IMG/VR virus record: IMGVR_UViG_3300044644_001125
Span: 1 to 64,000 of that record
Reading direction: 5' to 3' (one strand)
Length of the DNA stretch: 64,000 nucleotides
The position numbers and the translations under genes were made by a program. This document shows, piece after piece, positions 13,606 through 46,499 of the stretch (positions are counted from its first letter, which is position 1; each line of letters begins with the position of its first letter). The notes below the pieces were generated by a model. That model saw only the letters and a program-made list of their open reading frames with translations, was not told where the DNA came from and did no database searches.

Positions 13606-15090
13606 ATGGCAAAAACTCTTTCAAGTATACTCCACATTGGAGCTCCAGTAACCGGATCAGGTAGCGCTATTCTTAGTGATAGTCCAGTAATAACATCGAA
13701 AATTGACACGTCAAGTACCAGTTTCGATTTAATTAACACGGCTGCGAGTACAGTGAATATTGCCGGTGCCGCGACCGCATTGGCACTCGCAGGTACTACT
13801 GGTACTACTACCATCCGTAACAATTTAACAGTAACCGGTAACATAACATACGGTGGTGGTGCAAACCAATTAAGTGCTACCAATTTGAGTGTGGACGACG
13901 CATTAATCTATTTGGCTGCGAATAATAGTGTTGCTGACATCATTGATATTGGTATTGTTGGTCGATACAATAATGGCGTTAACAATGATACGCATACTGG
14001 GCTTGTTCGGGATGCCACTGATAAATCATGGAAGTTGTTCAGTGGAATAACAACCGAACCGACAACCGTAGTTGATTTCACAAGTGCCACCTATGATAAC
14101 TTGAAGATCGGTGGATTAACCGCATCAACCGGTGTATTTTCTGGTCAAATAACCTCAAATATTACAACTGGGACAGCACCATTTGTGATTACATCAACAA
14201 CACCAGTCGCGAATTTGAATATCGGTGGTTATTCATCAGCGTTGAAATCAGCAACTACTATCATTGATGTTTCCGCTGCAGTGGCGCCATCGAATGGTAA
14301 AGTATTAACTGCAACTAGTGCAACAACTGCCGAATGGAAAGATCCAGTCGGTGGTGGCGGTGCTGGAACTGTGATTTCAGTCGGTGGTACTGGTAGTGTT
14401 AATGGTATTACATTATCTGGCACCGTAACTTCGTCCGGTAATTTAACACTAAGTGGTACGTTAAGTAATGTATCATTGACTTCGGCAGTTACTGGAACAT
14501 TACCTGTTGGAAATGGTGGTACTGGTGCTACTACGTTGACTGGATTGGTCAAAGGAAATGGAACTTCTGCGTTTACTGCAGCCAGTGCTGGTACTGACTT
14601 TGTCGCTCCCGGTGGTGTATTAGGAACTCCTTCTTCTGGTACATTAACTAATTGTACTGGTTTACTATTGACAACTGGTGTGACTGGTACGTTAGCAACT
14701 GCAAATGGTGGTACTGGCTCAACAACCTTGACTTTCCCATCAGGTACTGCATCAATTGGTTATTTGAACGTACCACAAGTATCACAAAGTGCTAACTACG
14801 AATGCGTATTATCAGATTCTGGTAAACACATTTTGCACCCAGCAGAAGATACTACGGCTAGAACTTTTACCATTCCGGCAAATGCTTTAGTGGCATTTCC
14901 AGTTGGAACTGTATTGACGTTTGTGAATGAACCTGGTGCTGGTAGTGTAGCCATTCAGGTAACTACTGATAGTCTATATCTCGCTGGTGCTGGTACGACA
15001 GGTATTAGAACTTTAGCTGCTCCTGGTATCGCAACTGCAATCAAAACATCAAGTACTACCTGGATTATTTCTGGAACTGGGTTGAGTTGA
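13606..15090 (+). CDS. Tail fibre protein
   Basis: Thr/Gly-rich LPV.NGGTG repeats; shares long modules with the downstream 1476 aa fibre. Confidence 0.75.
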   Translation: MAKTLSSILHIGAPVTGSGSAILSDSPVITSKIDTSSTSFDLINTAASTVNIAGAATALALAGTTGTTTIRNNLTVTGNITYGGGANQLSATNLSVDDALIYLAANNSVADIIDIGIVGRYNNGVNNDTHTGLVRDATDKSWKLFSGITTEPTTVVDFTSATYDNLKIGGLTASTGVFSGQITSNITTGTAPFVITSTTPVANLNIGGYSSALKSATTIIDVSAAVAPSNGKVLTATSATTAEWKDPVGGGGAGTVISVGGTGSVNGITLSGTVTSSGNLTLSGTLSNVSLTSAVTGTLPVGNGGTGATTLTGLVKGNGTSAFTAASAGTDFVAPGGVLGTPSSGTLTNCTGLLLTTGVTGTLATANGGTGSTTLTFPSGTASIGYLNVPQVSQSANYECVLSDSGKHILHPAEDTTARTFTIPANALVAFPVGTVLTFVNEPGAGSVAIQVTTDSLYLAGAGTTGIRTLAAPGIATAIKTSSTTWIISGTGLS

Positions 15091-15136: not shown

Positions 15137-15182
15137 TGCCTATTAGTTCCTAAATACACCATTAGTGGAGAGGGAAACTAAC

Positions 15183-18100
15183 ATGAATGTAAATTTTATA
15201 GTAAAGAATGGTATTATAGTAACAACTGATGCTACCATCAATTCAACGACTGATACAACATCAAATACAACCGGAGCTCTTAAAGTAGCTGGTGGTGTTG
15301 GTATCACAAAAAAAGTCAAAGTAGGAACTGCTGCATCTGACAGTAGATTCCCAAATACTACAGTAGCTATTTCAAATTCGCCATCGGCTACTATTGAAAA
15401 TCATAATATTGGATTATTGGCAGAGGGAACTGCAAATCCAGCAAATCAATCAATTTATGGGGTTGGTGTTTACGGCGTTGGTTACACATCAGGTGCTACT
15501 AGATCAGGTGGTGTTGTCGGTGAAGGTCATGTAACATCAACAACTGATACCGGTTCAGCAATTGGTATTCGAGGATATTCAAATGATACACATTCTGGTG
15601 GTTCGAATATCGGCTTGTACGGCGATGCAACGAATGGTGCTAATAATTACGCATTGTATTTGAATAATGGTAACGTATACTCCAATTATGCACTCGCGTG
15701 GACATTAAATGGTGATTTAACATTTGCGGGTTCTCATACAGTAACAATTCCATCATTAGCGTTAACTAACGCATTACCTGTAACATCGGGTGGTACTGGA
15801 GTTACTACAAAGACTGGTACGGGTGATGTAGTACTATCAAGCAGTCCATCGTTAGTCACGCCAAGTTTGGGTTCGGCAACAGCAACGAGTATTAATGGGA
15901 TTGCATTTACGCCAACAACTGCTACTATTGGTTTGGCAAGTAATTCAAGTTTATTAACTATCGGTGGGTACAGTACTACAATCACTACAACTGGAACTAC
16001 CAATATAACGTTACCAACTACTGGAACATTGGTTAATTCCGCAGTTACCACACTAAGTTCATTAACCTCAGTTGGTACAATTGGTACTGGTACTTGGTCT
16101 GGTTTATTTGGGTCGGTTTCAGGTGCAAACTTAACCAACTTAACAGCTGCCAATTTGACTGGTACAATACCAAGTACTGTCCTAGGCAACTCATCAGTTT
16201 ATCTTGGAACCACTCCAATTACATTGAATAGAGGCAGTGGAAGTTTAACGTTAACGAGTGTTAATATCGATGGATATGCACAGTCATTGAAATCGGCATC
16301 TACTACTATTAATGTGTCATCAGCAACAGCACCAGCAGCCAATCAAGTATTGATGGCAACAAGTTCAACTGCAGCAACTTGGCAATCTATTTCGTTAACT
16401 AGTGCGGTTACTGGAACATTACCAGTTGCGAATGGTGGCACTGGCGTTACGACGAAAACTGGTACAGGTAGCGTAGTCTTATCAACCAGTCCAACTGTAA
16501 CCACGTCATTGGTTACCGATAGTACTAGTTTTGACTTAATAAACACCACTGCTACAAGTGTAAATTTCGCAAAAGCTGCGACAGCTGTATCTATGGGGGC
16601 ATCTAGTGGTACCACCACAATAAATCATGATTTATACGTGTCTGGTAACATTACATTTGGTGGCGGTGCAAATCAATTGAGTGCAACTAACTTAAGCGTA
16701 GACGATGCCTTAATTTATATTGCTGCTAATAATTCTTCAGATATAGTAGATATTGGTTTGGTTGGTGCTTACGATACCGGAACTCATATACATACTGGTT
16801 TGGTTAGGGATGCAACCGATAAAGTTTGGAAATTATTCAGTGGAATTGCAGCTGAACCAACAACTACAGTTGATTTCACCGGTGCTACCTACGATAACTT
16901 GAAAATCGGTGGTTTAACCGCATCTACTGGGTCATTTTCATCAACGATTACTGGCACACAACTAACATCTACTGTAGCAACTGGAACTGCACCGTTCGTT
17001 GTTACATCAACTACCCCTGTGTCTAATTTGAATATTGGCGGGTACTCCTCGGCGTTGAAATCATCTACCACAACCGTAGATGTATCTGCCGCAACCGCAC
17101 CATCAAATGGTCAGGTTTTGACTGCTACAAGCTCGACAACTGCAATCTGGAAAGATGCACCAACCGCTAATTTAACACCAACTGCAATAAAATCTGCAAA
17201 TTACACGGCAAATGCTTTTGAATTAGTAAGAGCGAATTCAACAAGTGGTTCATTTACGATAACATTACCAACATCACCAGTTGATGGTACTGTTATTGGT
17301 ATTATCGATTTATATAACAAATTCTCAACTAACAATGTAACTATTTCTGCTGGTTCTGGTAATACCGTTGAAAGTTCTATTTCCTTAGTTTTAGATATCG
17401 ATGGTGCATTTGCATCTTTTGTTTATACAACAGCAACCTCTGATTGGAAAATTCAACAAACACCAATGTCAGGTGGTACGGTAACTAGTGTTGGTGGTAC
17501 TGGTACAGTTAATGGTATTTCATTATCAGGAACGGTAACTGCTAGTGGTAACTTAACATTAGGTGGTACATTAACAGGAGTTGATTTGACCTCGGCGGTT
17601 ACAGGTACATTACCTGTTTTAAATGGTGGTACCGGTGTAACAACTAAAACCGGAACTGGTAATTTAGTATTATCAACCAGTCCGGTATTAACCACACCAT
17701 CGCTGGGTGTTGCAAGCGCTACAAGTATCAATGGCTTAACTGTATCAAGTACTACTGGTACATTAACATTAGCCAATAGTTCATCATTGATTACATCTGG
17801 TGGTTATAGCACAACTATCACTTCAACAGGTACAACTTCTGTTACATTACCAACATCTGGTACATTGGTAAATTCTGCAGTTACTACATTAAGTTCATTA
17901 ACCTCGGTTGGTACTATTAGCACTGGTACCTGGTCAGGGTCATTCGGTGCGGTCACTGGTGCTAACTTAACTAATTTAACTGCTGGTAATTTATCTGGTA
18001 CAATACCAAGTGCGGTTTTGGGTAACTCGACGCATTATATTGGAACTACCGCTGTAACTTTGAACAGAGCAAGTGGCAGTTTATCACTAGCCGGTGTTAA

Positions 18101-19613
18101 TATCGATGGGTATGCGGGTGCATTAAAATCTGCAACAACTACGGTTGATGTTTCCACGGCAACTGCACCCACATCTGGACAAGTATTGGTGGCAACCGGA
18201 CCAACGGCAGCAACCTGGCAATCATTACCAACTGGAACTGGTACAGTAACCAATGTCAGCGGTACAGGTACCGTTAATGGTATTTCATTATCTGGTAGTG
18301 TAACATCAACTGGCAGTTTAACTCTCGGTGGTACACTATCCGGGGTATCATTGACATCTCAAGTATCTGGAACCTTACCAGTTGCTAACGGTGGTACTGG
18401 TGTAACCACTTCTTCTGGTACTGGTAGTGTTGTATTAACCAACAGCCCGTCTTTAGTAACGCCGACTTTAGGTGCTGCAACCGCAACTAGCATTAATAAA
18501 TTAACGTTAACTGCTCCTACGACAAGTGCAACGTTAACGCTTGCTGATAGTTCTTCGCTAATTACAGTTGGTGGGTTCAGTACAACATTTACTTCCACGG
18601 GCATCACCTCGGTTACATTACCGACTTCTGGTACTTTAGTCAATACCACAGTTACTTCGTTGGGATCGTTGGCTACGGTCGGTACAATTACTTCTGGTAC
18701 TTGGTCTGGTTCTTTTGGTGCAGTATCTGGTGCTAATTTAACTAATTTAACCGCAGGTAACTTAACTGGTACTATTCCAAGTGCTGTTTTAGGTAACTCA
18801 ACACATTACATTGGAACCACTGCAGTAACATTAAATCGAGCCAGTGGCAGTTTAACTTTAACAGGTGTTAGTGTCGATGGGTATGCGGGTGCATTAAAAT
18901 CCGCAACCACAACGATTGACGTTTCAGCAGCATCGGCACCGTCCTCAAATCAAGTATTAATGGCAACCAGTTCAACCACTGCAACTTGGCAAATAGTATC
19001 GATGGCGAATGTATCAGGTACATTACCTGTTGCTAATGGTGGTACTGGTGCTACCACGTTGACTGGATTGGTCAAAGGAAATGGAACCTCTGCGTTTACT
19101 GCTGCCGTAGCTGGTACTGATTATGTGGTACCTAGTGGAGCTTTGGGGACTCCGGTCTCTGGTACATTGACTAGTTGTACTGGATTGCCATTAACAACTG
19201 GTGTTACTGGAACATTACCTGTTGCAAATGGTGGTACTGGGTCAACGACGTTAACATTCCCAAGTGGTACTGCATCGATTGGTTATTTGAATATCCCACA
19301 AGTATCACAAAGTGCAAATTATACATGTGTGTTAACTGATTCTGGTAAACACATCTACCACCCGAGTGCTGATACCACCGCAAGAACATTTACTATTCCA
19401 TCAAACGCGTCAGTTGCATATCCGATTGGAACGGCTATTATGTTCATGAATGATTCATCTGCTGGTGTTGTAACTATTGCTATCGATACTGATACGTTAG
19501 TATTAGCTGGTGCTGGTACTACTGGTAGTAGATCATTAGCTGCTAACGGAATTGCGACTGCAGTGAAAATGACATCCACACGATGGATGATTAGTGGAAC
19601 TAATTTAACTTAA
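15183..19613 (+). CDS. Long tail fibre protein with internal repeats
   Basis: ATG at 15183 after GGAGAGGG RBS and CTAAATA (15150-15156); three ~150 aa repeats and many LPVANGGTG motifs. Confidence 0.8.
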   Translation: MNVNFIVKNGIIVTTDATINSTTDTTSNTTGALKVAGGVGITKKVKVGTAASDSRFPNTTVAISNSPSATIENHNIGLLAEGTANPANQSIYGVGVYGVGYTSGATRSGGVVGEGHVTSTTDTGSAIGIRGYSNDTHSGGSNIGLYGDATNGANNYALYLNNGNVYSNYALAWTLNGDLTFAGSHTVTIPSLALTNALPVTSGGTGVTTKTGTGDVVLSSSPSLVTPSLGSATATSINGIAFTPTTATIGLASNSSLLTIGGYSTTITTTGTTNITLPTTGTLVNSAVTTLSSLTSVGTIGTGTWSGLFGSVSGANLTNLTAANLTGTIPSTVLGNSSVYLGTTPITLNRGSGSLTLTSVNIDGYAQSLKSASTTINVSSATAPAANQVLMATSSTAATWQSISLTSAVTGTLPVANGGTGVTTKTGTGSVVLSTSPTVTTSLVTDSTSFDLINTTATSVNFAKAATAVSMGASSGTTTINHDLYVSGNITFGGGANQLSATNLSVDDALIYIAANNSSDIVDIGLVGAYDTGTHIHTGLVRDATDKVWKLFSGIAAEPTTTVDFTGATYDNLKIGGLTASTGSFSSTITGTQLTSTVATGTAPFVVTSTTPVSNLNIGGYSSALKSSTTTVDVSAATAPSNGQVLTATSSTTAIWKDAPTANLTPTAIKSANYTANAFELVRANSTSGSFTITLPTSPVDGTVIGIIDLYNKFSTNNVTISAGSGNTVESSISLVLDIDGAFASFVYTTATSDWKIQQTPMSGGTVTSVGGTGTVNGISLSGTVTASGNLTLGGTLTGVDLTSAVTGTLPVLNGGTGVTTKTGTGNLVLSTSPVLTTPSLGVASATSINGLTVSSTTGTLTLANSSSLITSGGYSTTITSTGTTSVTLPTSGTLVNSAVTTLSSLTSVGTISTGTWSGSFGAVTGANLTNLTAGNLSGTIPSAVLGNSTHYIGTTAVTLNRASGSLSLAGVNIDGYAGALKSATTTVDVSTATAPTSGQVLVATGPTAATWQSLPTGTGTVTNVSGTGTVNGISLSGSVTSTGSLTLGGTLSGVSLTSQVSGTLPVANGGTGVTTSSGTGSVVLTNSPSLVTPTLGAATATSINKLTLTAPTTSATLTLADSSSLITVGGFSTTFTSTGITSVTLPTSGTLVNTTVTSLGSLATVGTITSGTWSGSFGAVSGANLTNLTAGNLTGTIPSAVLGNSTHYIGTTAVTLNRASGSLTLTGVSVDGYAGALKSATTTIDVSAASAPSSNQVLMATSSTTATWQIVSMANVSGTLPVANGGTGATTLTGLVKGNGTSAFTAAVAGTDYVVPSGALGTPVSGTLTSCTGLPLTTGVTGTLPVANGGTGSTTLTFPSGTASIGYLNIPQVSQSANYTCVLTDSGKHIYHPSADTTARTFTIPSNASVAYPIGTAIMFMNDSSAGVVTIAIDTDTLVLAGAGTTGSRSLAANGIATAVKMTSTRWMISGTNLT

Positions 19614-32646: not shown

Positions 32647-34266
32647 ATGGCAAACAGAAACCTAGATGGCGTTCAAATCTTAAGAGCACATCAAAAACAA
32701 CAATACACACTTGAACAAGTACAACACTTAGAGAAATGTATGGATCCAGTTACTGGACCTCTTTACTTCTGCAAAAACTTCTTGAAAATCCAGCATCCAA
32801 CTAGAGGTGCAATCCCATTTGAACCATACGAATATCAAGAAAGATTGATTCAAGCATATAACGATAATACTTATACAATCGCTATGCTACCACGTCAGAT
32901 GGGTAAAGCACTTTGCAACGAAACTCCTGTATTAACACCAAATGGATTCAAACGAATGGGTGATATCCAAGTCGGTGATACTATCTATACACCTAAAGGT
33001 ACACCAACTGAAGTAACTTTCATTACTGAAACGATGACAAATCGTACTTGTTACAATGTTGAATTCTCACACGGTGAAAGTATTATCGCAGATGCACACC
33101 ACCTTTGGACTTGGTTTGACCCAGGCTACAATGACTTGATTACTGAAAATACCGAATACCTGATTAAACGTGTTAATAAGTTTAAAACGTCAAACATTAG
33201 ACTCAGTATGGATTATACAAAACTCATTGAATTCGACAAGAAACCAATGAAACTAGATCCATATCTAATCGGTATTTGGATGGGTAATGACCCAGAAGTA
33301 AATCAAATGAGATGCTATACTCACGAATATACCAGATATAACGAGATGTTTAAATCCCATGGTCTTACTATGTCTGAATTAACACTAAGAAGACACAGTA
33401 AACGATTGGGTATGTACTCAGTTAATAACCTAGAGTTCATGGTAAAACCGGTTCTTAATAAGGATAATACCTTACCAGAAGAGCTCATGCTCAATGATTC
33501 TGAAACTCGTTTACAAATCATTAGAGGTATTATGGATGTATGCGGTAGTGTATCAGATACTGGGTACTGTACTTTTAAACATACCAATGAGAAAATCATG
33601 GAACAAACACGTTTCATGTTGGCTACTCTAGGTGTTAAAACCCATTTGAAAGTCGAAGTCTGTAAGTTTAAAACCAATTACTATCTTAATTTTTCAACTA
33701 AAGACTTAAGACTATTCAATCTGTCTGAGAAAGTTGATAAAGCTGCATTGAGTAATCACTTCCCAAATAATGAAAGAGTTTATATCAAAAGCATTACCAA
33801 AGCAAAATCAGTACCAGTTAGATGTTTACAAGTGGCAGATAGAAAACATCTATTCCTAGTGGGTAAAACTCTAGTACCAACACATAACACTACTTGTGCA
33901 TGTGGATTCTTGCTCTGGTATACCATGTTTGTTCCCGAAGCCCAAGTACTGATTGCTGCTCACAAATACGCCGGTGCACAAGATATTATGAACCGATATC
34001 GATATGGCTACGAGAACTTACCAGACTTTATCCGTGCCGGTGTTTATTCATATAACAGGAATACAATCGAATTTGATAATGGTGCTCGTATCCAAGCAAC
34101 TACCACTACTGAAAATACAGGTCGAGGTAAGTCGCTCTCTTTGATTTATTGCTTAGATGGAGATACTACTGTTCGTATCAGACACAAGGAAACCCTTGTA
34201 GAAGAAGAGATATCACTCGCTGCGTTATATCAACGACTTGACCCAGCGGTACAGGTTATTGCTTAA
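32647..34266 (+). CDS. terL: Terminase large subunit, fragment 1 (N-extein, cis intein, extein, split-intein N-part)
   Basis: gp17-like IQHP.RG.IPF.PYEYQ; Walker A PRQMGK|TT interrupted by an intein; GRGKSLSLIY followed by CLDGDT intein start and a stop codon. Confidence 0.93.
   Translation: MANRNLDGVQILRAHQKQQYTLEQVQHLEKCMDPVTGPLYFCKNFLKIQHPTRGAIPFEPYEYQERLIQAYNDNTYTIAMLPRQMGKALCNETPVLTPNGFKRMGDIQVGDTIYTPKGTPTEVTFITETMTNRTCYNVEFSHGESIIADAHHLWTWFDPGYNDLITENTEYLIKRVNKFKTSNIRLSMDYTKLIEFDKKPMKLDPYLIGIWMGNDPEVNQMRCYTHEYTRYNEMFKSHGLTMSELTLRRHSKRLGMYSVNNLEFMVKPVLNKDNTLPEELMLNDSETRLQIIRGIMDVCGSVSDTGYCTFKHTNEKIMEQTRFMLATLGVKTHLKVEVCKFKTNYYLNFSTKDLRLFNLSEKVDKAALSNHFPNNERVYIKSITKAKSVPVRCLQVADRKHLFLVGKTLVPTHNTTCACGFLLWYTMFVPEAQVLIAAHKYAGAQDIMNRYRYGYENLPDFIRAGVYSYNRNTIEFDNGARIQATTTTENTGRGKSLSLIYCLDGDTTVRIRHKETLVEEEISLAALYQRLDPAVQVIA
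32908..33888 (+). mobile_element. Class-3-type cis intein (327 aa) with degenerate LAGLIDADG domain, in the terminase Walker A
   Basis: Starts with Ala (ALCNETPV), block B HHLW, block F VRCLQV, ends PTHN followed by Thr; LDPYLIGIWMGND and RGIMDVCG endonuclease-like blocks. Confidence 0.85.
34150..34266 (+). mobile_element. Split intein 1, N-fragment (38 aa)
   Basis: CLDGDTTVRIR...EEISLAALY then stop, just before the Walker B acidic residues. Confidence 0.88.
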
Positions 34267-34330: not shown

Positions 34331-34683
34331 CTAAAAGATGATTGTCTTATTAGGTATATTATCTTTTAGTTATGATGTTCTTATAGATGATGTTTATATT
34401 TGATCTATTATCTTTTAGTTATGATGTTCTTATAGATGTTTGTATTAATGGTCTTATTGATGTGAGTTATTAGATAATTATCTTTTAGTTCAAAATGTAT
34501 GGGTTCGTATGGAGTTTATAACGTATGTGTGCATCTGGTAAAAAGCTATAATGTATGGGTTCGAATAGATCTAAAATGTATGTGCGCGAATGGAAACAGC
34601 TATAAGGGAATTATCTTTTAGAGTCAAAATGCGTGTGCGCGTGGCTTAAGCAGGTAGGAAGTAATGGATTCATTATCTTTTAG
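34331..34683. repeat. AT-rich repeat array containing ATTATCTTTTAG x5 and longer direct repeats
   Basis: Copies at 34358, 34407, 34477, 34610, 34672; 33-bp direct repeat 34357-34389 and 34406-34438; 14-bp AATGTATGGGTTCG at 34494 and 34550. Confidence 0.85.
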
Positions 34684-34749
34684 AATTATCTTATACGCTC
34701 CTACTATAATAGATTTAAGATAGAATCATTAATAGCTTTAATAATAGAG

Positions 34750-35230
34750 GCTTTTAATACTGCGGTATGTGGAGCGGAACATCTTAACCCGAAAAACTCG
34801 GGTTAATTCAAAGCATTCTCAATTGGGTTTTAAGTAATTGAAAAGTTCTGCGTACAAGTATCGCATCACAGCAGCAGTAGAGCGTTACAGAGGCGGTCAG
34901 CCGGTACCTCGAGCTCAGTCTTATTAATCTGACGGTGGCCACATGAACAACTGCTACCTCATTCATGCGACGTGGACTTTTTAGTCCATCTTTAGCCTTT
35001 GTAAATCTTTTCGCTATAACACAAATGGGTTGTATGAAGGCATATCCCATAACTCATCTGGTGGGGTAGTGTGTTATATCTCCGTTGCTAACTTCGGAAC
35101 TTCCATCCCTTGTGATCAAGTAGTCCAAGGTTTAAGGGCATCATATCAGTCGCCGATGCAGGCTTTCTTAGCAATTCTCTCGTCTTTCTATGTTCTATCT
35201 AGTAATTCGACGAGCAAGGTTTGGCTGGTG
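34750..35230 (-). ncRNA. Candidate large structured non-coding RNA (family unidentified, ends approximate)
   Basis: No credible ORF; more GC-rich than flanks; stems at 34784-34806, 34890-34910, 34973-34988, 35015-35078, 35108-35130, 35179-35214; strong promoters upstream on the minus strand. Confidence 0.55.
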
Positions 35231-35240
35231 CCTAAAAGAT

Positions 35241-35339
35241 AATAGACTTGGTGTCGGTATTGTATATAGTTCAAATAGACTTTGTGTCGGTAGGATTTGG
35301 TCTCTAAAAGATAATTGAGTAATAGACTTGGTGTCGGTA
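35241..35339. repeat. Three copies of a 19-bp repeat AATAGACTT(G/T)GTGTCGGTA
   Basis: Copies at 35241, 35274 and 35321, interleaved with CTAAAAGATAAT at 35232 and 35304. Confidence 0.85.
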
Positions 35340-38936: not shown

Positions 38937-39965
38937 ATGAGCAAGGCAACCTATTTATTATCTCCAATTGACGGAAACACCTACTGCAAAACCAATGGTA
39001 AGTTCACTATACATCTTAGGGAATATGGACTTACCTATCAAGATTATTATGAAACTTATATACTTGGGTATTGTCCAATATGTGCATGCGGGTCTAAAGT
39101 TACGATGAATGTATCGACCCATTTACATCCACGCAGTTGTGGAAAGCCTGTGTGTGTTGGTAAAATCACCAGCGATGTTAAACAGAATTGGACTCCGGAA
39201 CAGAGAGAGCAGGATTCAGCCAATAAGAAAGCCGCAAGTGCTGCAGAGACACCGGAGAAAAAACAACAGCGAAACGATAAACGTAAAGCAACTAACTTAA
39301 AAAATCACGGCGTTGAGTGGTCTACCCAGTCGGAAACAATGAAATCTAAGTCAAAACAGACTAAACTTGTACGACACGGTGATGAAAACTACAATAACAG
39401 CAAGATGATCAGTGCAACCAATCTAGCAAAACCTAGAGAGGAAAAAGACGAGATCAATGAAAAACGACGTCTAACTAATTTAGATATGCATGGTGTCGAA
39501 AACTGCTGTTTGATTCCGGGAAATTCGAGTAAATCGAATAAAGGAAACGCGAAGATTAAAGATTACACATTGCCATCTGGTAAGGTTATTGGAGTTCGTG
39601 GTTACGAACCAAATGCAATGGATACCTTATTAGAATCGTATCAAGAATCTGATATATTGATGCACGATGATTACTCAGAATATCAAATCCAAGTTTTCAG
39701 CTATACCTCGGACAAAGGTAGAATCGCGAAATACTACCCAGACATTTATATCCCTTCGGAAAACCGAATTATTGAGATCAAAAGTCAATGGTGGTGGGAT
39801 GGTAATGGTAAGACTGACGAAAAATATACAACCCGACTTGCGAATAATCTTAGAAAAAGGCAAGCCGTGATTGATGCTGGATATAATTACGAAGTGTGGT
39901 TATTTACTAGCAAGACAAACTATAGAGTACTAAAAGATGATGCAGACTTTCAAACCAAACACTAA
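38937..39965 (+). CDS. Free-standing PD-(D/E)XK-type endonuclease
   Basis: VRGYEP, YYPDIYIPSENRIIEIKS motif; N-terminal Cys motif and K..TNL..HGVE repeats; TTAAATA at 38891-38897. Confidence 0.72.
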   Translation: MSKATYLLSPIDGNTYCKTNGKFTIHLREYGLTYQDYYETYILGYCPICACGSKVTMNVSTHLHPRSCGKPVCVGKITSDVKQNWTPEQREQDSANKKAASAAETPEKKQQRNDKRKATNLKNHGVEWSTQSETMKSKSKQTKLVRHGDENYNNSKMISATNLAKPREEKDEINEKRRLTNLDMHGVENCCLIPGNSSKSNKGNAKIKDYTLPSGKVIGVRGYEPNAMDTLLESYQESDILMHDDYSEYQIQVFSYTSDKGRIAKYYPDIYIPSENRIIEIKSQWWWDGNGKTDEKYTTRLANNLRKRQAVIDAGYNYEVWLFTSKTNYRVLKDDADFQTKH

Positions 39966-40278
39966 GAACTTAAAGGTACTAACACCAGATGGATTCCAAC
40001 CCTTCTCTGGTGTTAGTATGCGTGGAGTTAAACCAATTATTCGATTAACATTCGAAAAAGACGTATGGATAGAATGCACACCTGAGCATAAATTCTACAT
40101 CTCTGAAACTGAACAAAAGTTAGCAAGTGATTTTAGGATTGGTGATACCATATTAAGTTCGGATGGTGATTTGAAGTTAATCACTTCTGAAGATTTGGGT
40201 AGAACTGAACCAGTATACGATTTAATTGAAGTTGCTAACGGTCATCGGTTCTATGCGAATTCACTATTAAGTTCGAAT
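39937..40278 (+). mobile_element. Split intein 2, C-fragment (114 aa)
   Basis: VLTPDGF, block B CTPEHKF, FRIGD, block F VYDLIEV, HRFYANSLLSSN|C. Confidence 0.88.
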
Positions 40279-41040
40279 TGCGAATTCTTAATTGATGATG
40301 AAACGTTAATTAATTCGGTTAAATTGGCAGAACTAAAGGGTGTAGATCCGCTATTGACGATGGGGCAAATGCGTTGGTATAAAGAAATCAATCCATTGTC
40401 AACCTATCTAGTATCACTAGACCCAAGTTTGGGAACAGGCGGTGACTTTGCTGCTATGCAAGTATTTGAAATGCCTAGTATGGAACAAGTGGGTGAATGG
40501 CGACACAATACCACACCTGTTCAAACGCAGATAAGGCATTTGAGGGATATCTTAAAACACATCCATGATAGTGGTATTGAAAAATCTGGGTTTGCTCCAA
40601 CTACATATTACAGTATGGAGAATAATACACTAGGTGAAGCAGCCCTAATCGTTATTGAGAGTATTGGTGAGGAGAACTTTCATGGGTTATTCCTGTCAGA
40701 ACCGATTAAGAAAGGGCATATCAGGAAGTTCCGTAAAGGGTTTAATACCACACATAGAACAAAAGTTACTGCATGTAGTCAGTTTAAAAACTTATTAGAA
40801 ACTGGTAAGATGAAGATTAACTCTAAAGTTCTAGTATCTGAGTTGAAAACTTATATCTCAAGGGGTGTTGGGTTTGGTGCTAAATCAGGTGAGAATGACG
40901 ATTTGATTTCTGCAGTTCTTCTTATTATAAGAATGGCAACTGTATTATCTGATTGGGATCCATCGATATATGATAAGATGTCTGAGAAACTGACTGAAGA
41001 TCAGATGCCATTGCCTATCTTTATTAGTAGTGGATTCTAA
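39937..41040 (+). CDS. terL: Terminase large subunit, fragment 3 (IntC2 plus C-terminal nuclease domain)
   Basis: 114 aa intein C-part ending SSN, then CEFL, LDPSLGTGGDFAA, ENNTLG, GENDDL RNase H-like nuclease motifs. Confidence 0.93.
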   Translation: MMQTFKPNTKNLKVLTPDGFQPFSGVSMRGVKPIIRLTFEKDVWIECTPEHKFYISETEQKLASDFRIGDTILSSDGDLKLITSEDLGRTEPVYDLIEVANGHRFYANSLLSSNCEFLIDDETLINSVKLAELKGVDPLLTMGQMRWYKEINPLSTYLVSLDPSLGTGGDFAAMQVFEMPSMEQVGEWRHNTTPVQTQIRHLRDILKHIHDSGIEKSGFAPTTYYSMENNTLGEAALIVIESIGEENFHGLFLSEPIKKGHIRKFRKGFNTTHRTKVTACSQFKNLLETGKMKINSKVLVSELKTYISRGVGFGAKSGENDDLISAVLLIIRMATVLSDWDPSIYDKMSEKLTEDQMPLPIFISSGF

Positions 41041-41140
41041 AAGATAATCGAACCCAATAAACCCAAGGCTAAAAGATAATTGAAACCCACGTACCATAAG
41101 CTAAAAGATAATTGACCTACCATAAACTATTATCTTTTAG
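41037..41140. repeat. Array of the 12-bp motif: three copies at 32-bp period plus one inverted copy
   Basis: CTAAAAGATAAT at 41037, 41069, 41101; ATTATCTTTTAG at 41129. Confidence 0.9.
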
Positions 41141-43734: not shown

Positions 43735-44740
43735 TTAGAGCAGTTCTTGAATAGATGCCCAAGAAAGTTGATGCTTGGTCAATATATGAATAATAACATT
43801 ATTATCTTTCATAGCTTGATTGATCTTAGGGATATCTTTAGGTATAATCCAATCGTTCTTTGGATCTAAGTAAATATCTTGATCGGGTAAGTAAAAGTCA
43901 GCAAAATACTTTTTCTTTAATCCATTAAGGACGTAATACATGTAAGGTGGTCTTGTCAACGGAATACCATGATCATCCAAATCTTTGGCAACTCGATACT
44001 CGTAAGAGGATTCTAACCAAACACGACCAGCGAATGGTGAATCATACCAACCATACGCGTGGTTATTTTGATTACCACCGAAGTTTGGATTATTAGTTGC
44101 AGTTCTTGATATAATCGCTCTAGCGCATTTAGTAGAACACGTGGATCTCTCGGTCGTATTGTGAAACCATTTACCACATTCTTTACATTGCGACACCTTA
44201 GAATATGGTGGTTTAGTTGGACGATTATATGAAGATTTTTTAGTTTTGGTGGTATTACTACTTTTTGCAGTACTATCACTTTCTGGCAATCTCACACCCA
44301 TAGCTGTTTTTGCACAAGTATCAGAACAAGTTAACCGTTTTCCAGTCTTAGGAAACCATTTACCGCATACTTTGCACTGCGATACTAGGGTATACGGTCC
44401 TTGTTGAGTAATTGTCCTTTAATGACGAACTCGTTTCAATACCAACCGAGTTTCTAGGAGTACGGAATTTGTTATTAACGGTGGCCGCACAACTAGATGA
44501 GCAGTATTTGTTGAAACTGGTACTAGTTTTCTTACCGCAGCATATGCAGCTTGATAGACTATCAATATGATCTTTTAATTCGGATACGTACATCTCCTTT
44601 TTAGAATAAATACAACAGCACAGTAGTTCAATACGACGATTGGTTGGTTTACCACTGTTTTGGTGCTTACGGAAGATATGATGCTTGAGCATTCTCTTGT
44701 TTGTGTATTGTCTACTGCAGGTTTCACATGTATGAATCAT
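43735..44740 (-). pseudogene. Frameshifted Zn-finger-repeat PD-(D/E)XK (TnsA-like) endonuclease
   Basis: ORFs 44360..44740 and 43735..44301 join by a +1 shift near 44418-44363; repeated CK.CGKWF...TCS..C units; ESSYE...YFADFYLP...YLDPKN. Confidence 0.65.
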
Positions 44741-44767
44741 AAGTTTTAAATTAAAGTTGAGTTAATC

Positions 44768-44793
44768 GGTTGTGTATGGCCCCATACACAACC
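44768..44793. other. 12-bp inverted repeat next to a minus-strand late promoter
   Basis: GGTTGTGTATGG-CC-CCATACACAACC; ATAAATA on the minus strand at 44801-44795. Confidence 0.6.
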
Positions 44794-44899
44794 ATATTTA
44801 TGAACGGTTTTCATTATCTTTTAGCTAAATACCTAGTCTAAAAGATGATTTTCTCAAGGTGGTTTTCATTATCTTTTAGATAAATACAATATATGAAGT

Positions 44900-44974
44900 G
44901 CCGGTGTAGCTCAGTAGTAGAGCAGCTGTCTAGTAAACAGCAGGTCATGTGTGCAATCCACATTACCGGCTCCA
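44900..44974 (+). tRNA. tRNA-Thr (anticodon AGT), CCA encoded
   Basis: Acceptor GCCGGTG/TACCGGC, D stem GCTC/GAGC, anticodon stem GCTGT/ACAGC with loop CT-AGT-AA, T stem ATGTG/CACAT, ends TCCA. Confidence 0.9.
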
Positions 44975-45075
44975 GATATAAATCAATGACTTACGACTAA
45001 AAGATAATAGTTCCCTAAAGCTAATCAATAGGTAACCTGTTCGAATCAAACATAAAGCAATACATAAAATAAACC

Positions 45076-45104
45076 TTGACATACTAAAACAAAACACATA
45101 TACT
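45076..45104 (+). promoter_or_regulatory. Sigma70-type early promoter
   Basis: TTGACA (45076-45081), 17 bp, TATACT (45099-45104). Confidence 0.88.
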
Positions 45105-45146
45105 TAACAAATGCAGTAACCCTTCAATAACTTAAGAGGTAGTAAA

Positions 45147-45317
45147 ATGGAAGATTTAAAATCAATGTCAGCACAAGAACTTTTCGATTTGTATTACACC
45201 AAATCATGGGAATTAGTAAAAGCAATTCACTCTATCAAAGATGAACTTCCTGAAGAAATCACGTCTATTGCAGCTTTAATGATCGATGCAAATGATCAAC
45301 GATTATCGTTAGATTAA
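45147..45317 (+). CDS. Small hypothetical early protein (56 aa, MEDLKSMSAQELF...), not in ORF track
   Basis: GAGG RBS, its own consensus promoter, open to TAA at 45317. Confidence 0.7.
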   Translation: MEDLKSMSAQELFDLYYTKSWELVKAIHSIKDELPEEITSIAALMIDANDQRLSLD

Positions 45318-45319
45318 TA

Positions 45320-45348
45320 TTGACAAACTAAAACACTTACTTTATACT
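45320..45348 (+). promoter_or_regulatory. Sigma70-type promoter for the gp32-like gene
   Basis: TTGACA (45320-45325), 17 bp, TATACT (45343-45348). Confidence 0.88.
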
Positions 45349-45488
45349 AAACACTCTGGGCTAAGAAACCCTTAGCCCAAACTTTCAAAAGCAACCTAGG
45401 ACGGCAATATGATTTAGATATATACTTACAACAGAGTTACAATTCACAAGAGCAGTACAAACTTTTTACTTTTTATAGGAATACAAAA

Positions 45489-46499
45489 ATGGCATCTTTA
45501 GCTGAAATCCGCGCAAAACTTCAAGCATCACAAAACAACCAATCTAACAGTGGTTCTAATGGCGAACCAAGCGTTATCTATCCACACTGGAACATTACCG
45601 ATGGTAATGAAACAACAATCCGATTCTTACCGGATGCAGACACAACCAATGATTTCTTCTGGGTTGAAAAACAAATGATTAGACTTCCCTTCGCTGGCAT
45701 TAAAGGCGAGGCAGATTCACGTCCAGTTGTTGTTCAAGTTCCATGTATTGAGATGTATGATGCAAAAGCATACTGCCCAATTTTAACCGAGGTTCGTGGT
45801 TGGTTCAAAGACAAATCATTAGAAGAAATGGGTCGTAAGTATTGGAAAAAACGTACGTTCTTAGCACAAGGATTTGTTGTTGAAGATGGCTTGAAAGAAG
45901 AAAACCCACCTGAAAACAAAATCCGTAGATTCATTATCAGTCCACAAATCTTTGGTTTGATTAAATCTGCCTTATTAGATCCAGAGTTAGATGAATTACC
46001 AACTGATTACTTACGCGGTCTTGACTTCCGTATTTGCAAAACCTCAAAAGGTGGATTTGCTGATTACTCAACTTCTAAATGGAGCCGTCGTGAACGTGCT
46101 TTAAATGAAGAAGAATTGCAAGCAATTGCTGACCATGGGTTATTCAACTTAGCTGACTTCTTACCTAAACGTCCTGGTGAAGTTGAGTTGAAAGTTATTA
46201 AAGAAATGTTTGAAGCATCTGTTGTTGGTGAAGCCTATGATGTTGAAAGATGGGGTCAATACTATCGTCCAAATGGAATTCAAGCACCTACTACAGAAAC
46301 TCGTGTAGTTGCTGCACCTGCGGCATCAGTTGCTGATTCTGTTGTTTCTGCTCCTTTATCATCAGCTGATGATTTACCATGGGAAACTCCTGCAGCACCT
46401 TCTTATGCAACACCAGCGGTTGCACCTGAAACATCTGCTGAAGGCGCAAGTCGTGCACAAGACATTCTTAAAATGATTCGTGACCGTCAAACGGCTTAA
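45489..46499 (+). CDS. gp32: Single-stranded DNA-binding protein (T4 gp32-like)
   Basis: IRFLPD, FFWVE, V.VPC.EMY...CPIL.EVR.WFKD, GRKYWKKR, GGFADYSTSKW motifs. Confidence 0.93.
   Translation: MASLAEIRAKLQASQNNQSNSGSNGEPSVIYPHWNITDGNETTIRFLPDADTTNDFFWVEKQMIRLPFAGIKGEADSRPVVVQVPCIEMYDAKAYCPILTEVRGWFKDKSLEEMGRKYWKKRTFLAQGFVVEDGLKEENPPENKIRRFIISPQIFGLIKSALLDPELDELPTDYLRGLDFRICKTSKGGFADYSTSKWSRRERALNEEELQAIADHGLFNLADFLPKRPGEVELKVIKEMFEASVVGEAYDVERWGQYYRPNGIQAPTTETRVVAAPAASVADSVVSAPLSSADDLPWETPAAPSYATPAVAPETSAEGASRAQDILKMIRDRQTA

What the first reader, a model, noticed from the sequence alone, without database searches (positions are those of the whole stretch)
44900..44974. Rare tRNA-Thr(AGU) with co-varied D/T-loop contact, under late promoters
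A34 anticodons other than Arg(ACG) are uncommon in bacteria; E. coli TadA edits only tRNA-Arg, while Mycoplasma uses an unmodified tRNA-Thr(AGU). This tRNA also replaces the usual G18 and U55 with A18 and G55 (D loop AGTAGTA, T loop TGCAATC), a paired change that suggests function, and has U73. It follows late-type promoters, and the late fibre genes are extremely rich in Thr codons including ACT, so it may relieve Thr demand or evade anticodon nucleases.
Basis: partly seen in the sequence, partly recalled or inferred. Interest (0 to 1): 0.6.

Follow-up and report, generated by a model that had tools for sequence, protein, structure and literature searches.

The report
Late phage threonine tRNA, altered elbow
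A giant lake-water phage carries a real threonine tRNA with the rare anticodon AGU behind late-gene promoters, and its odd D-loop/T-loop pair (A18 with G55) turns out to be a recurrent, compensated variant seen in many phage tRNAs but almost never in bacterial genomes.

Summary
Window 44900-44974 (+) is a tRNA-Thr(AGU): ARAGORN finds it and Rfam scores it 60.3 bits. It has D loop AGUAGUA (A18), T loop UGCAAUC (G55), U73 and an encoded CCA. The window is the start of a 327-kb uncultivated lake-water jumbo myophage, distantly related to PA5oct/Rak2-like phages.

The exact allele occurs in independent lake metagenomes. Three relatives keep a Thr(AGU) gene at the same site, with a canonical G18/U55 elbow and stems that differ by compensatory changes.

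A18 and G55 covary strongly in viral tRNAs. Of 65 well-folding tRNAs picked only for an A18 D arm, 62 have G55. Among tRNAs not picked by my patterns the association gives Fisher p 6e-31. The A18 D arm was absent from 401 Pseudomonadota genomes and matched 2 of 151 Bacteroidota genomes.

Two (C/A)TAAATAC boxes, the motif that precedes the sheath, virion and fibre genes, lie just upstream. The tail fibre ORFs are 12-20% Thr. However, ACU's share of Thr codons there (0.39) equals the genome mean. The phage encodes no TadA.

Best reading: a functional, late-expressed, ACU-reading Thr tRNA with a compensated elbow. Expression, charging and the state of A34 are untested.

The parts
44768..44793 (.). 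G+C-rich hairpin followed by a T-rich tail. It is terminator-like and isolates the tRNA unit from the genes to its left.
   Evidence: Terminator scan, 11-bp stem; kept in relative L167.
44806..44832 (+). Upstream repeat 1. It holds the genome-wide 12-mer ATTATCTTTTAG (44813-44824) followed by the late-type -10-like box CTAAATAC (44825-44832).
   Evidence: CTAAATAC is the same box as before the sheath gene 24418 and the virion protein gene 41584.
44838..44849 (-). Minus-strand copy of the 12-mer (ATCATCTTTTAG).
44861..44887 (+). Upstream repeat 2. It holds the 12-mer (44868-44879) followed by ATAAATAC (44880-44887), which ends 12 nt before the tRNA 5' end. This is the proposed proximal late promoter.
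   Evidence: It is identical in relatives L006 and L167.
44900..44974 (+). tRNA-Thr(AGU), 75 nt including the encoded CCA. A18 is at 44916, anticodon at 44932-44934, G55 at 44953 and U73 at 44971.
   Evidence: Compensatory stem changes against orthologues. Exact allele in independent runs.
44997..45008 (-). Inverted copy of the 12-mer downstream of the tRNA. Together with 44868-44879 it brackets the tRNA cassette, as it does in relatives.
   Evidence: A long-range stem is predicted but is not significant, z -1.3.
45076..45104 (+). Sigma-70-type promoter (TTGACA-N17-TATACT) that starts the next, early-type unit (small ORF 45147-45317, then SSB 45489-46499). It marks the right-hand limit of the tRNA unit.
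   Evidence: 11 of 12 consensus matches; SSB is phrog_1192 at 4.5e-62.

Best explanation
This is a functional elongator tRNA-Thr(AGU) of a lake-water jumbo myophage. It is transcribed by the host RNA polymerase from two T4-type late promoters ((C/A)TAAATAC boxes), the second ending 12 nt upstream. RNase P would trim the short leader, and the CCA end is already encoded. Host ThrRS would charge it, because G1-C72, C2-G71, G35 and U36 are all present.

A34 most likely stays unmodified, so the tRNA reads ACU by Watson-Crick pairing, with only weak reading of ACC. ACU is the phage's commonest Thr codon. The supply would rise late in infection, when the capsid, sheath and very Thr-rich tail fibre proteins are made.

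A18 with G55 replaces the usual G18-Psi55 contact of the tRNA elbow as a compensated pair. The tRNA would therefore keep its L shape but carry neither Psi55 nor Gm18.

Shown here: the gene, its fold, its conservation, the covariation, the promoter-motif context and the codon counts. Inferred: the timing of transcription, charging, the state of A34, and the geometry of A18-G55.
For: tRNA calls and fold:
- ARAGORN, Rfam 60.3 bits and a cloverleaf MFE.

Conservation and structure:
- Three relatives (L006, L167, L311) keep Thr(AGU) at the same place, behind the same box and before the SSB gene.
- On a seven-row alignment (the window, those three relatives, and three other phage Thr tRNAs) 96.8% of cells pair, 11 pairs change on both sides, and 0 of 500 shuffles reach this.
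- The anticodon is kept although about 20 of 76 positions differ while the flanks are identical.
- The exact allele is found in independent lake runs.

A18/G55 covariation:
- 62 of 65 tRNAs chosen only by an A18 D arm have G55.
- Among tRNAs not selected by my patterns: AG/G55 19, AG/U55 1, GG/U55 619, GG/G55 5, p 6e-31.

Promoter context:
- (C/A)TAAATAC lies within 60 nt before 34 of 56 same-strand ORF starts, including the sheath, a virion protein and a fibre gene.
- The phage's other tRNA (Met) sits behind an early TTGACA-N17-TAGAAT promoter instead.

Codon demand:
- Thr is 7.7% of codons and ACU is 39% of Thr codons.
- The Thr-richest ORFs match tail fibre families.

State of A34:
- The only deaminase in the genome is a dCMP deaminase.
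- In E. coli an AGU-anticodon tRNA was not converted to inosine and preferred ACU over ACC by about 10:1 or more (PMC11066159).
Against: - There are no expression data. The one RNA run laid had no contig on the tRNA.
- The host is unknown, so neither its tRNA set nor its TadA specificity can be compared.
- ACU's share of Thr codons in the fibre genes equals the genome mean. Its rise in the capsid and sheath genes parallels most other T-ending codons, so codon usage does not single out this tRNA.
- Close relatives manage with a canonical elbow, so A18/G55 is not needed for the tRNA's role.
- In yeast SUP4oc, single changes at G18 or U55 abolish function, and G18A was rescued only by U20G among the doubles scored (PMC4117946). 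Activity of A18/G55 in translation is therefore inferred from covariation alone.
- A late sigma factor (gp55-like) was not looked for.
Confidence: 0.68

Rival explanations
1. A34 is deaminated to inosine by the unknown host's TadA. One phage tRNA then reads ACU, ACC and ACA, which together are about 89% of the phage's Thr codons. That would make it a far more powerful supplement than an ACU-only reader.
For: ACT, ACC and ACA make up 0.39 + 0.20 + 0.30 of Thr codons. Some bacteria hold several A34 tRNAs, and some of those are inosine-modified; Oenococcus oeni is cited in PMC11066159. Native Thr(AGT) genes occur in Leuconostoc, Pediococcus and some freshwater MAGs.
Against: The phage has no TadA; its only deaminase is a dCMP deaminase. 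E. coli TadA edited only ANG anticodons and did not edit AGU (PMC11066159). The anticodon loop CUAGUAA differs from the tRNA-Arg(ACG) loop at positions 35 and 36.
Confidence: 0.12
2. The gene is a decaying or neutral passenger. The elbow changes are damage, and the tRNA contributes nothing to translation.
For: Close relatives have a canonical elbow. The locus is a shuffling hot spot: its content is Thr, Thr+Asn or Asn+Thr in different relatives, and a neighbouring small ORF is present or absent. ACU is not specially enriched in the fibre genes.
Against: All stems are intact and compensated. The CCA, the ThrRS identity nucleotides and the other tertiary pairs are kept. A18/G55 is a recurrent covarying pair rather than random damage. 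The anticodon and promoter are conserved in four lineages. The identical allele persists in lake samples filed between 2016 and 2024.
Confidence: 0.1
3. The tRNA serves counter-defence. Either the AGU anticodon loop or the A18/G55 elbow lets it escape a host nuclease, or a phage-induced one, that removes host tRNA-Thr, so that translation of late genes continues.
For: The A18 D arm is nearly confined to viral contigs: more than 119 viral stretches, against 0 of 401 Pseudomonadota and 2 of 151 Bacteroidota genomes. The G18 version was found in 16 of 16 genomes at about 9 copies each. Phage tRNAs that escape anticodon nucleases are known (own knowledge).
Against: I know of no nuclease aimed at tRNA-Thr, and none that reads positions 18 or 55. 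In most phage contigs only one of many tRNAs is A18/G55, for example 1 of 27 in L242. Relatives with a normal elbow keep the same anticodon. No defence or nuclease gene was examined.
Confidence: 0.1

Closest known systems
Phage-encoded tRNAs of large myophages (T4, KVP40, PA5oct with 12 tRNAs including Thr(TGT)); codon-compensation model of Bailly-Bechet et al. 2007
   Same: It is a tRNA gene in a lytic, AT-richer phage genome that matches a codon the phage uses heavily. PA5oct-group kinship is shown by 48% SSB identity. The PA5oct tRNA list is in PMC7318152.
   Different: The anticodon is AGU instead of the usual UGU or CGU. The phage has only two tRNAs. This one sits behind late-type boxes, whereas the other sits behind an early promoter. 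The elbow is A18/G55.
Mycoplasma capricolum tRNA-Thr(AGU) with unmodified A34 (Andachi 1987; Inagaki 1995, as cited in PMC11066159)
   Same: It has the same anticodon. A34 is probably unmodified. Native Thr(AGT) genes were found here in Mesoplasma and Spiroplasma genomes.
   Different: The Mycoplasma tRNA is a cellular tRNA in a minimal decoding set. The Thr(AGT) genes retrieved from Mesoplasma and Spiroplasma were found with a pattern that requires G18-G19 in the D loop. The Mycoplasma tRNA reads ACU, ACC and ACG in vitro. The sequences are not closely related.
Bacterial tRNA-Arg(ACG)/TadA inosine system
   Same: A is encoded at position 34.
   Different: The anticodon loop is not of the ACG/ANG type. 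The phage has no TadA. E. coli TadA does not edit AGU.
Canonical tRNA elbow (G18-Psi55 and G19-C56)
   Same: G19-C56, U54-A58, G53-C61, U8 and A14 are all kept.
   Different: G18-Psi55 is replaced by A18-G55. I found no description of this natural pair in the paper library. It recurs in about 1% of neighbouring viral tRNAs.
T4 late promoters (TATAAATA, gp55/gp33/gp45-dependent; own knowledge)
   Same: It is an A+T-rich -10-only box, nTAAATAC, placed before structural genes and a few nt before the presumed start.
   Different: The consensus is (C/A)TAAATAC, not TATAAATA (7 copies, only 2 before ORFs). The sigma factor was not identified and start sites were not mapped.

Membership tests
tRNA (Rfam RF00005) | Score above the gathering threshold; cloverleaf with 7/4/5/5-bp stems | tested here: met
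   60.3 bits against 29; cloverleaf in the MFE; 96.8% of cells paired, with 11 doubly changed pairs, on the seven-row Thr tRNA alignment.
tRNA (canonical tertiary core) | U8, A14, G19-C56, U54-A58 and G53-C61 present | tested here: met
   Read from the sequence.
tRNA (canonical tertiary core) | G18 and U55 (the Psi55 contact) | tested here: not met
   A18 at 44916 and G55 at 44953. The two changes covary across viral tRNAs, so this is a variant core, not a broken one.
tRNA-Thr (ThrRS identity as defined in E. coli: G1-C72, C2-G71, G35, U36; own knowledge) | Identity nucleotides present | tested here: met
   Acceptor stem GCCGGTG/TACCGGC and anticodon AGT. U73 is also seen in many phage Thr tRNAs.
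tRNA-Thr | Aminoacylated with threonine | not testable with these tools
   Needs charging assays.
Inosine-34 tRNAs (TadA substrates) | A34 in an ACG/ANG-type anticodon loop, and a deaminase available | tested here: not met
   The loop is CUAGUAA. The only deaminase in the genome is a dCMP deaminase (phrog_174 at 7.7e-51; TadA model 31 bits against a cut-off of 150). AGU was not edited in E. coli. The host enzyme is unknown.
T4-type late transcription unit | -10-only TATAAATA-like box shared with structural genes | tested here: met
   CTAAATAC and ATAAATAC at 44825-44832 and 44880-44887. The same box lies before the sheath, virion protein and fibre genes; 34 of 56 copies lie within 60 nt before ORF starts.
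T4-type late transcription unit | Late sigma factor (gp55-like) encoded, and late timing of the transcript | not tested
   No search for gp55/gp33 homologues was made. The RNA run gave no contig on the tRNA.
Anticodon-nuclease-evading phage tRNAs | A cognate host nuclease, and loop changes that block it | not tested
   The host is unknown and no nuclease was identified.

The most novel reading that the evidence does not exclude
A18-G55 is a phage-specific alternative tRNA elbow. It has arisen many times and in many isoacceptors, and it is kept because a tRNA lacking Psi55 and Gm18 behaves differently in an infected cell. It might, for example, be ignored by a host or phage factor that binds, modifies or destroys tRNAs through the G18-Psi55 elbow. 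This Thr(AGU) would be one accessible natural example, with an isogenic G18/U55 counterpart in sister phages.
Probability: 0.15. Interest if true: 0.85.

Novelty: new variant of a known kind. Interest (0 to 1): 0.6.

Why it matters
Phage tRNAs are usually explained by codon matching. Here an unusual anticodon (AGU) is conserved at one locus through an exchange of the tRNA body, and it is wired to late promoters next to an extreme Thr demand from the tail fibres. That makes a clean case for testing timed tRNA supply.

More broadly, G18-Psi55 is treated as nearly universal. This work found a compensated A18-G55 pair in about 1% of sampled viral tRNAs and almost none in 552 bacterial genomes. That offers a natural experiment on what the elbow contact and its modifications (Psi55, Gm18) are for, and it may yield tRNA scaffolds that host enzymes treat differently.

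Tried and rejected
- Megablast of the locus against GenBank phages found nothing.
- The nearest isolate tRNAs are Thr(CGT) or Thr(TGT) with normal loops.
- ARAGORN's third tRNA, Phe(AAA) at 202471-202541, and its relaxed-threshold extras have no Rfam support and were dropped.
- A phage TadA was sought. The single deaminase is a dCMP deaminase.
- Host inference from the most similar cellular Thr(AGT) genes gave no clear lineage.
- The RNA run X21 held only contigs of relatives beside the tRNA, so it gives no evidence on expression.
- An RNA stem between the inverted 12-mers that flank the tRNA is predicted but is not better than shuffles, z -1.3.
- I looked for cultured phages with A18/G55 by BLAST with one such tRNA. 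The four records inspected have canonical loops.
- Literature searches for A18/G55 and U55G/G18A in natural tRNAs found nothing relevant. The exception is the yeast SUP4oc mutational data.
- The big protein searches, structure prediction and complex prediction were not needed and were not used.

Full report
**What is there**

ARAGORN finds a single tRNA in the window, tRNA-Thr(agt) at 44900-44974 on the + strand. Rfam's tRNA model scores it 60.3 bits against a gathering score of 29. The 75 nt fold into a cloverleaf as the minimum-energy structure.

Direct reading gives:
- acceptor stem GCCGGTG/TACCGGC (G1-C72, C2-G71, with a G7-U66 wobble);
- D stem GCTC/GAGC with a 7-nt loop AGTAGTA (A14 G15 U16 A18 G19 U20 A21);
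- anticodon loop CTAGTAA with the anticodon AGT at 44932-44934;
- T stem ATGTG/CACAT with the loop TGCAATC (U54 G55 C56 A57 A58);
- U73 and an encoded CCA.

**Genomic setting**

The window is the first 64 kb of a one-contig, 327,256-bp IMG/VR virus record with 38% G+C and a CheckV completeness of 92%. It encodes a 1158-aa tail sheath, tail tube proteins, a major head protein, a split large terminase, a gp32-like SSB, UvsX, UvsY and many homing endonucleases.

Its SSB is 48% identical to that of Pseudomonas phage PA5oct, and less similar to those of Rak2-like coliphages. No GenBank phage is close at the DNA level. Near-identical DNA is held by lake-water and freshwater metagenomes from about 20 studies. 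The host is unknown.

By Rfam the whole genome has only two tRNAs: this one and a Met(CAT) tRNA at 89856-89931 on the minus strand. ARAGORN's Phe(AAA) call is not supported by Rfam.

**Is the allele real and maintained?**

An independent lake run (X4) has a 715-nt contig that covers 44480-45194 without a single difference. Run X2 holds 44952-45370 exactly, which includes the T loop. Run X3 holds 44578-44947 exactly, which includes the D loop.

Three related phage contigs carry a Thr(AGT) gene at the same place. They are L006 and L167, whose SSB is about 96% identical, and L311. In each the gene lies after the same ...CATTATCTTTTAG[A/C]TAAATA box and before the SSB gene. Their tRNA has the canonical D loop AGTTGGTA and a T loop TTCGATC or TTCGAAT.

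The 60 nt upstream and about 20 nt downstream are identical to the window, yet about 20 of 76 positions inside the tRNA differ. Nearly all of the stem differences preserve pairing:
- 27:43 GC to AU, and 31:39 UA to CG;
- 50:64 and 52:62 UA to CG;
- several GC to GU changes.

On a seven-sequence alignment (the window, these three relatives, and three other phage Thr tRNAs: MT836953 Thr-CGT, L164 and L199), 96.8% of cells pair and 11 pairs change on both sides. None of 500 shuffles and no slid register comes near.

The pattern of identical flanks around a divergent, compensated core suggests patch recombination between Thr tRNA genes of different phages. The shared 5' half occurs in at least 100 viral contigs. 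The AGU anticodon was retained through that exchange. This argues for selection on both structure and anticodon.

**The A18/G55 pair**

*Set 1.* Eighty tRNAs share the 5' half GCCGGTGTAGCTCAG..GTAGAGCA. With G18 they have U55, and a few have C55. The one other member with A18 (L164, Thr-TGT, D loop AGACAGTA) has the T loop TGCAACT, that is, G55.

*Set 2.* These tRNAs were chosen only by an A18 D arm (TAGCTCAG-N1-2-AGTAGAGC). Of the 65 that fold well, 62 have G55, mostly in TGCGAAT or TGCAAAT loops. They span many identities: Pro, Gly, Phe, Met, Thr, Ile, Val and others.

*All tRNAs.* Across the 804 unique ARAGORN tRNAs in all fetched viral loci:

| D loop | U55 | G55 | C55 |
|---|---|---|---|
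| contains GG | 671 | 14 | 15 |
| AG, no GG | 6 | 64 | 0 |

Among tRNAs not selected by my patterns the counts are AG/G55 19, AG/U55 1, GG/U55 619 and GG/G55 5, Fisher p 6e-31. Related sequences inflate this p value, but the spread over isoacceptors and contigs does not depend on it.

*Frequency.* Among neighbours on contigs chosen for an unrelated reason, 2 of 206 tRNAs (about 1%) are A18/G55. Usually only one of a phage's many tRNAs is of this type, with some exceptions such as L228, where 8 of 15 are.

*Cellular genomes.* The A18 D-arm pattern is absent from 401 sampled Pseudomonadota genomes. It matched one place in each of 2 of 151 Bacteroidota genomes. One place is an odd tRNA-like gene that also has G55; ARAGORN finds no tRNA at the other. 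The G18 version is present in 16 of 16 genomes at about 9 copies each.

*Literature.* I found no description of this natural pair. In yeast SUP4oc, single changes at G18 or U55 abolish function (PMC4117946). That fits a need for compensation. However, that study reports rescue of G18A only by U20G, so activity of A18/G55 in translation remains an inference.

*Consequence.* Such a tRNA cannot carry Psi55 or Gm18. This follows from the chemistry of those modifications and was not tested.

**Promoters**

The two 27-nt repeats before the tRNA each consist of two parts.

The first part is a 12-mer, ATTATCTTTTAG. It is not specific to late genes. It occurs 249 times in the genome at up to one mismatch, on both strands. 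Sixty percent of copies lie in the 10.5% of the genome that is non-coding. It often occurs as inverted pairs, and often in the spacer of early-type TTGACA-N17-TAGAAT promoters.

The second part, CTAAATAC or ATAAATAC, is the box found a few tens of nt before these genes:
- the sheath (24418);
- a virion protein (41584);
- the adaptor (22722);
- a fibre gene (15165);
- other structural genes.

Of its 56 copies, 34 lie within 60 nt before a same-strand ORF start. It resembles the T4 late -10 box TATAAATA (own knowledge).

A terminator-like hairpin at 44768-44793 precedes the unit, and a sigma-70-type promoter at 45076-45104 begins the next one. The phage's other tRNA, Met(CAT), lies 8 nt behind an early-type promoter. 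This contrast supports a deliberate late wiring of the Thr tRNA. Start sites and timing are not shown.

**Codon demand**

I used a crude set of 454 ORFs. Thr is 7.7% of codons, second only to Leu. The Thr codons split as ACT 39%, ACA 30%, ACC 20% and ACG 10%.

The Thr-richest ORFs of the genome are large proteins:
- 15165-19613, 20.3% Thr;
- 13606-15090, 17.8% Thr;
- 175309-179031, 15.2% Thr;
- the 268-279 kb block, 12-14% Thr.

Most of these match tail fibre or virion families; two of the large ORFs scanned (204770-206455 and 268036-272352) matched no PHROG family.

ACT reaches 8% of all codons in the two largest window fibre ORFs, against 3% genome-wide. This is because Thr is abundant there. 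ACT's share of Thr codons in the fibres is 0.39, the genome mean.

In the major head protein (0.65) and the sheath (0.52) the ACT share is higher. So are GGT, GTT, CGT and GCT, which indicates a general preference for T-ending codons in abundant proteins. The absolute load is enriched but the relative preference is not.

**State of A34**

The only zinc deaminase in the genome is a dCMP deaminase at G000 223412-223858. It matches phrog_174 at 7.7e-51, and the TadA model scores 31 bits against a cut-off of 150.

In E. coli, tRNAs with ANG anticodons were edited by TadA. An AGU-anticodon tRNA was not edited, and it read ACU over ACC by about 10:1 or more. The Mycoplasma A34 Thr tRNA reads ACU, ACC and ACG in vitro (PMC11066159). 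With an unknown host, inosine cannot be excluded, but unmodified A34 is the more likely state.

**How rare is Thr(AGU)?**

- Among viral tRNAs not selected by my patterns it is 2 of 44 Thr tRNAs, and non-Arg A34 anticodons are 9 of 689.
- Other examples are Streptomyces phage HaugeAnator, L163 and L199. L163 and L199 are also A18/G55.
- A D-arm-restricted pattern for Thr(AGT) (TAGCTCAG..GGTAGAGC with the loop xTAGTAA) matched only 92 stretches in one genome each of 185,579 species. Most are in Leuconostoc, Pediococcus and other Lactobacillaceae, in Mesoplasma and Spiroplasma, in DPANN archaea, and in assorted MAGs.

It is uncommon but not unique.

**Verdict**

The gene is a real, maintained phage tRNA-Thr(AGU). 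It most likely supplies Watson-Crick reading of ACU late in infection. The anticodon and its late wiring make it a new variant of the familiar phage-tRNA theme.

The more interesting result is general. A18-G55 is a recurrent, compensated and almost phage-restricted alternative to the G18-Psi55 elbow contact. Sister phages offer a natural G18/U55 comparison at the same locus.

Nothing here shows expression, charging, the state of A34 or any link to defence.

- the reads tool was given 1401 letters;
- no alternative genetic code was used;
- the costly protein searches were not used.

Noticed in passing
whole genome G000; in the window e.g. 34331-35315, 41037-41140, 44813-45008: The 12-mer ATTATCTTTTAG (up to 1 mismatch) occurs 249 times in 327 kb, on both strands. 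Sixty percent of copies lie in the 10.5% non-coding DNA. It often forms inverted pairs and often sits in the spacer of TTGACA-N17-TAGAAT promoters. It is also kept in related contigs. Its function is unknown; it may be a regulator site or a cassette-shuffling site.
   Followed up: partly
window 44868-44879 (+) and 44997-45008 (-); L006, L167, L311: Inverted copies of the 12-mer bracket the tRNA cassette in every relative, although the content differs: Thr alone here, Thr+Asn in L006 and L167, Asn+Thr in L311. The neighbouring small ORF 45147-45317 is missing from L006-type genomes (a 225-nt skip in X4 and X21 contigs). This is a local hot spot of modular exchange.
   Followed up: partly
window 32647-34266 and 39937-41040: The large terminase subunit is split into an N-terminal ORF (phrog_36964 positions 20-522) and a C-terminal ORF (positions 626-871). 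They are 5.7 kb apart. Between them lie arrays of the 12-mer, several ORFs and a homing endonuclease (38937-39965). Similar motif arrays recur near 165-166, 232-233 and 311 kb of the genome.
   Followed up: no
G000 89856-89931 (-), outside the window: The second tRNA of the phage, Met(CAT), has canonical GG and TTCGAAT loops. It starts 8 nt after an early-type TTGACA-N17-TAGAAT promoter. Whether it is an elongator Met or a lysidine-type Ile2 tRNA was not examined (ATA is 22% of Ile codons).
   Followed up: no
window 44995-45060; L006, L167, L311: A conserved element of about 65 nt follows the tRNA(s). It has tRNA-like fragments (TAGTTC..., GGTAAC, GTTCGAATC) but no Rfam match. It may be a decayed tRNA or a processing or termination signal.
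   Followed up: no
viral loci L136, L142, L165, L193, L237, L249-L251: A second elbow covariation appears in phage tRNAs. D loops with GA in place of GG go with T loops TTTGA.., that is, A19 with U56 replacing the G19-C56 pair.
   Followed up: no
L312 (Ga0255338_1000069, 453-kb metagenome contig): Another Thr(AGT) gene, with a fully canonical body and A73, lies behind a TATAAT-like box. It is unrelated in context to the window's phage, and its origin (bacterium or very large phage) was not determined.
   Followed up: no
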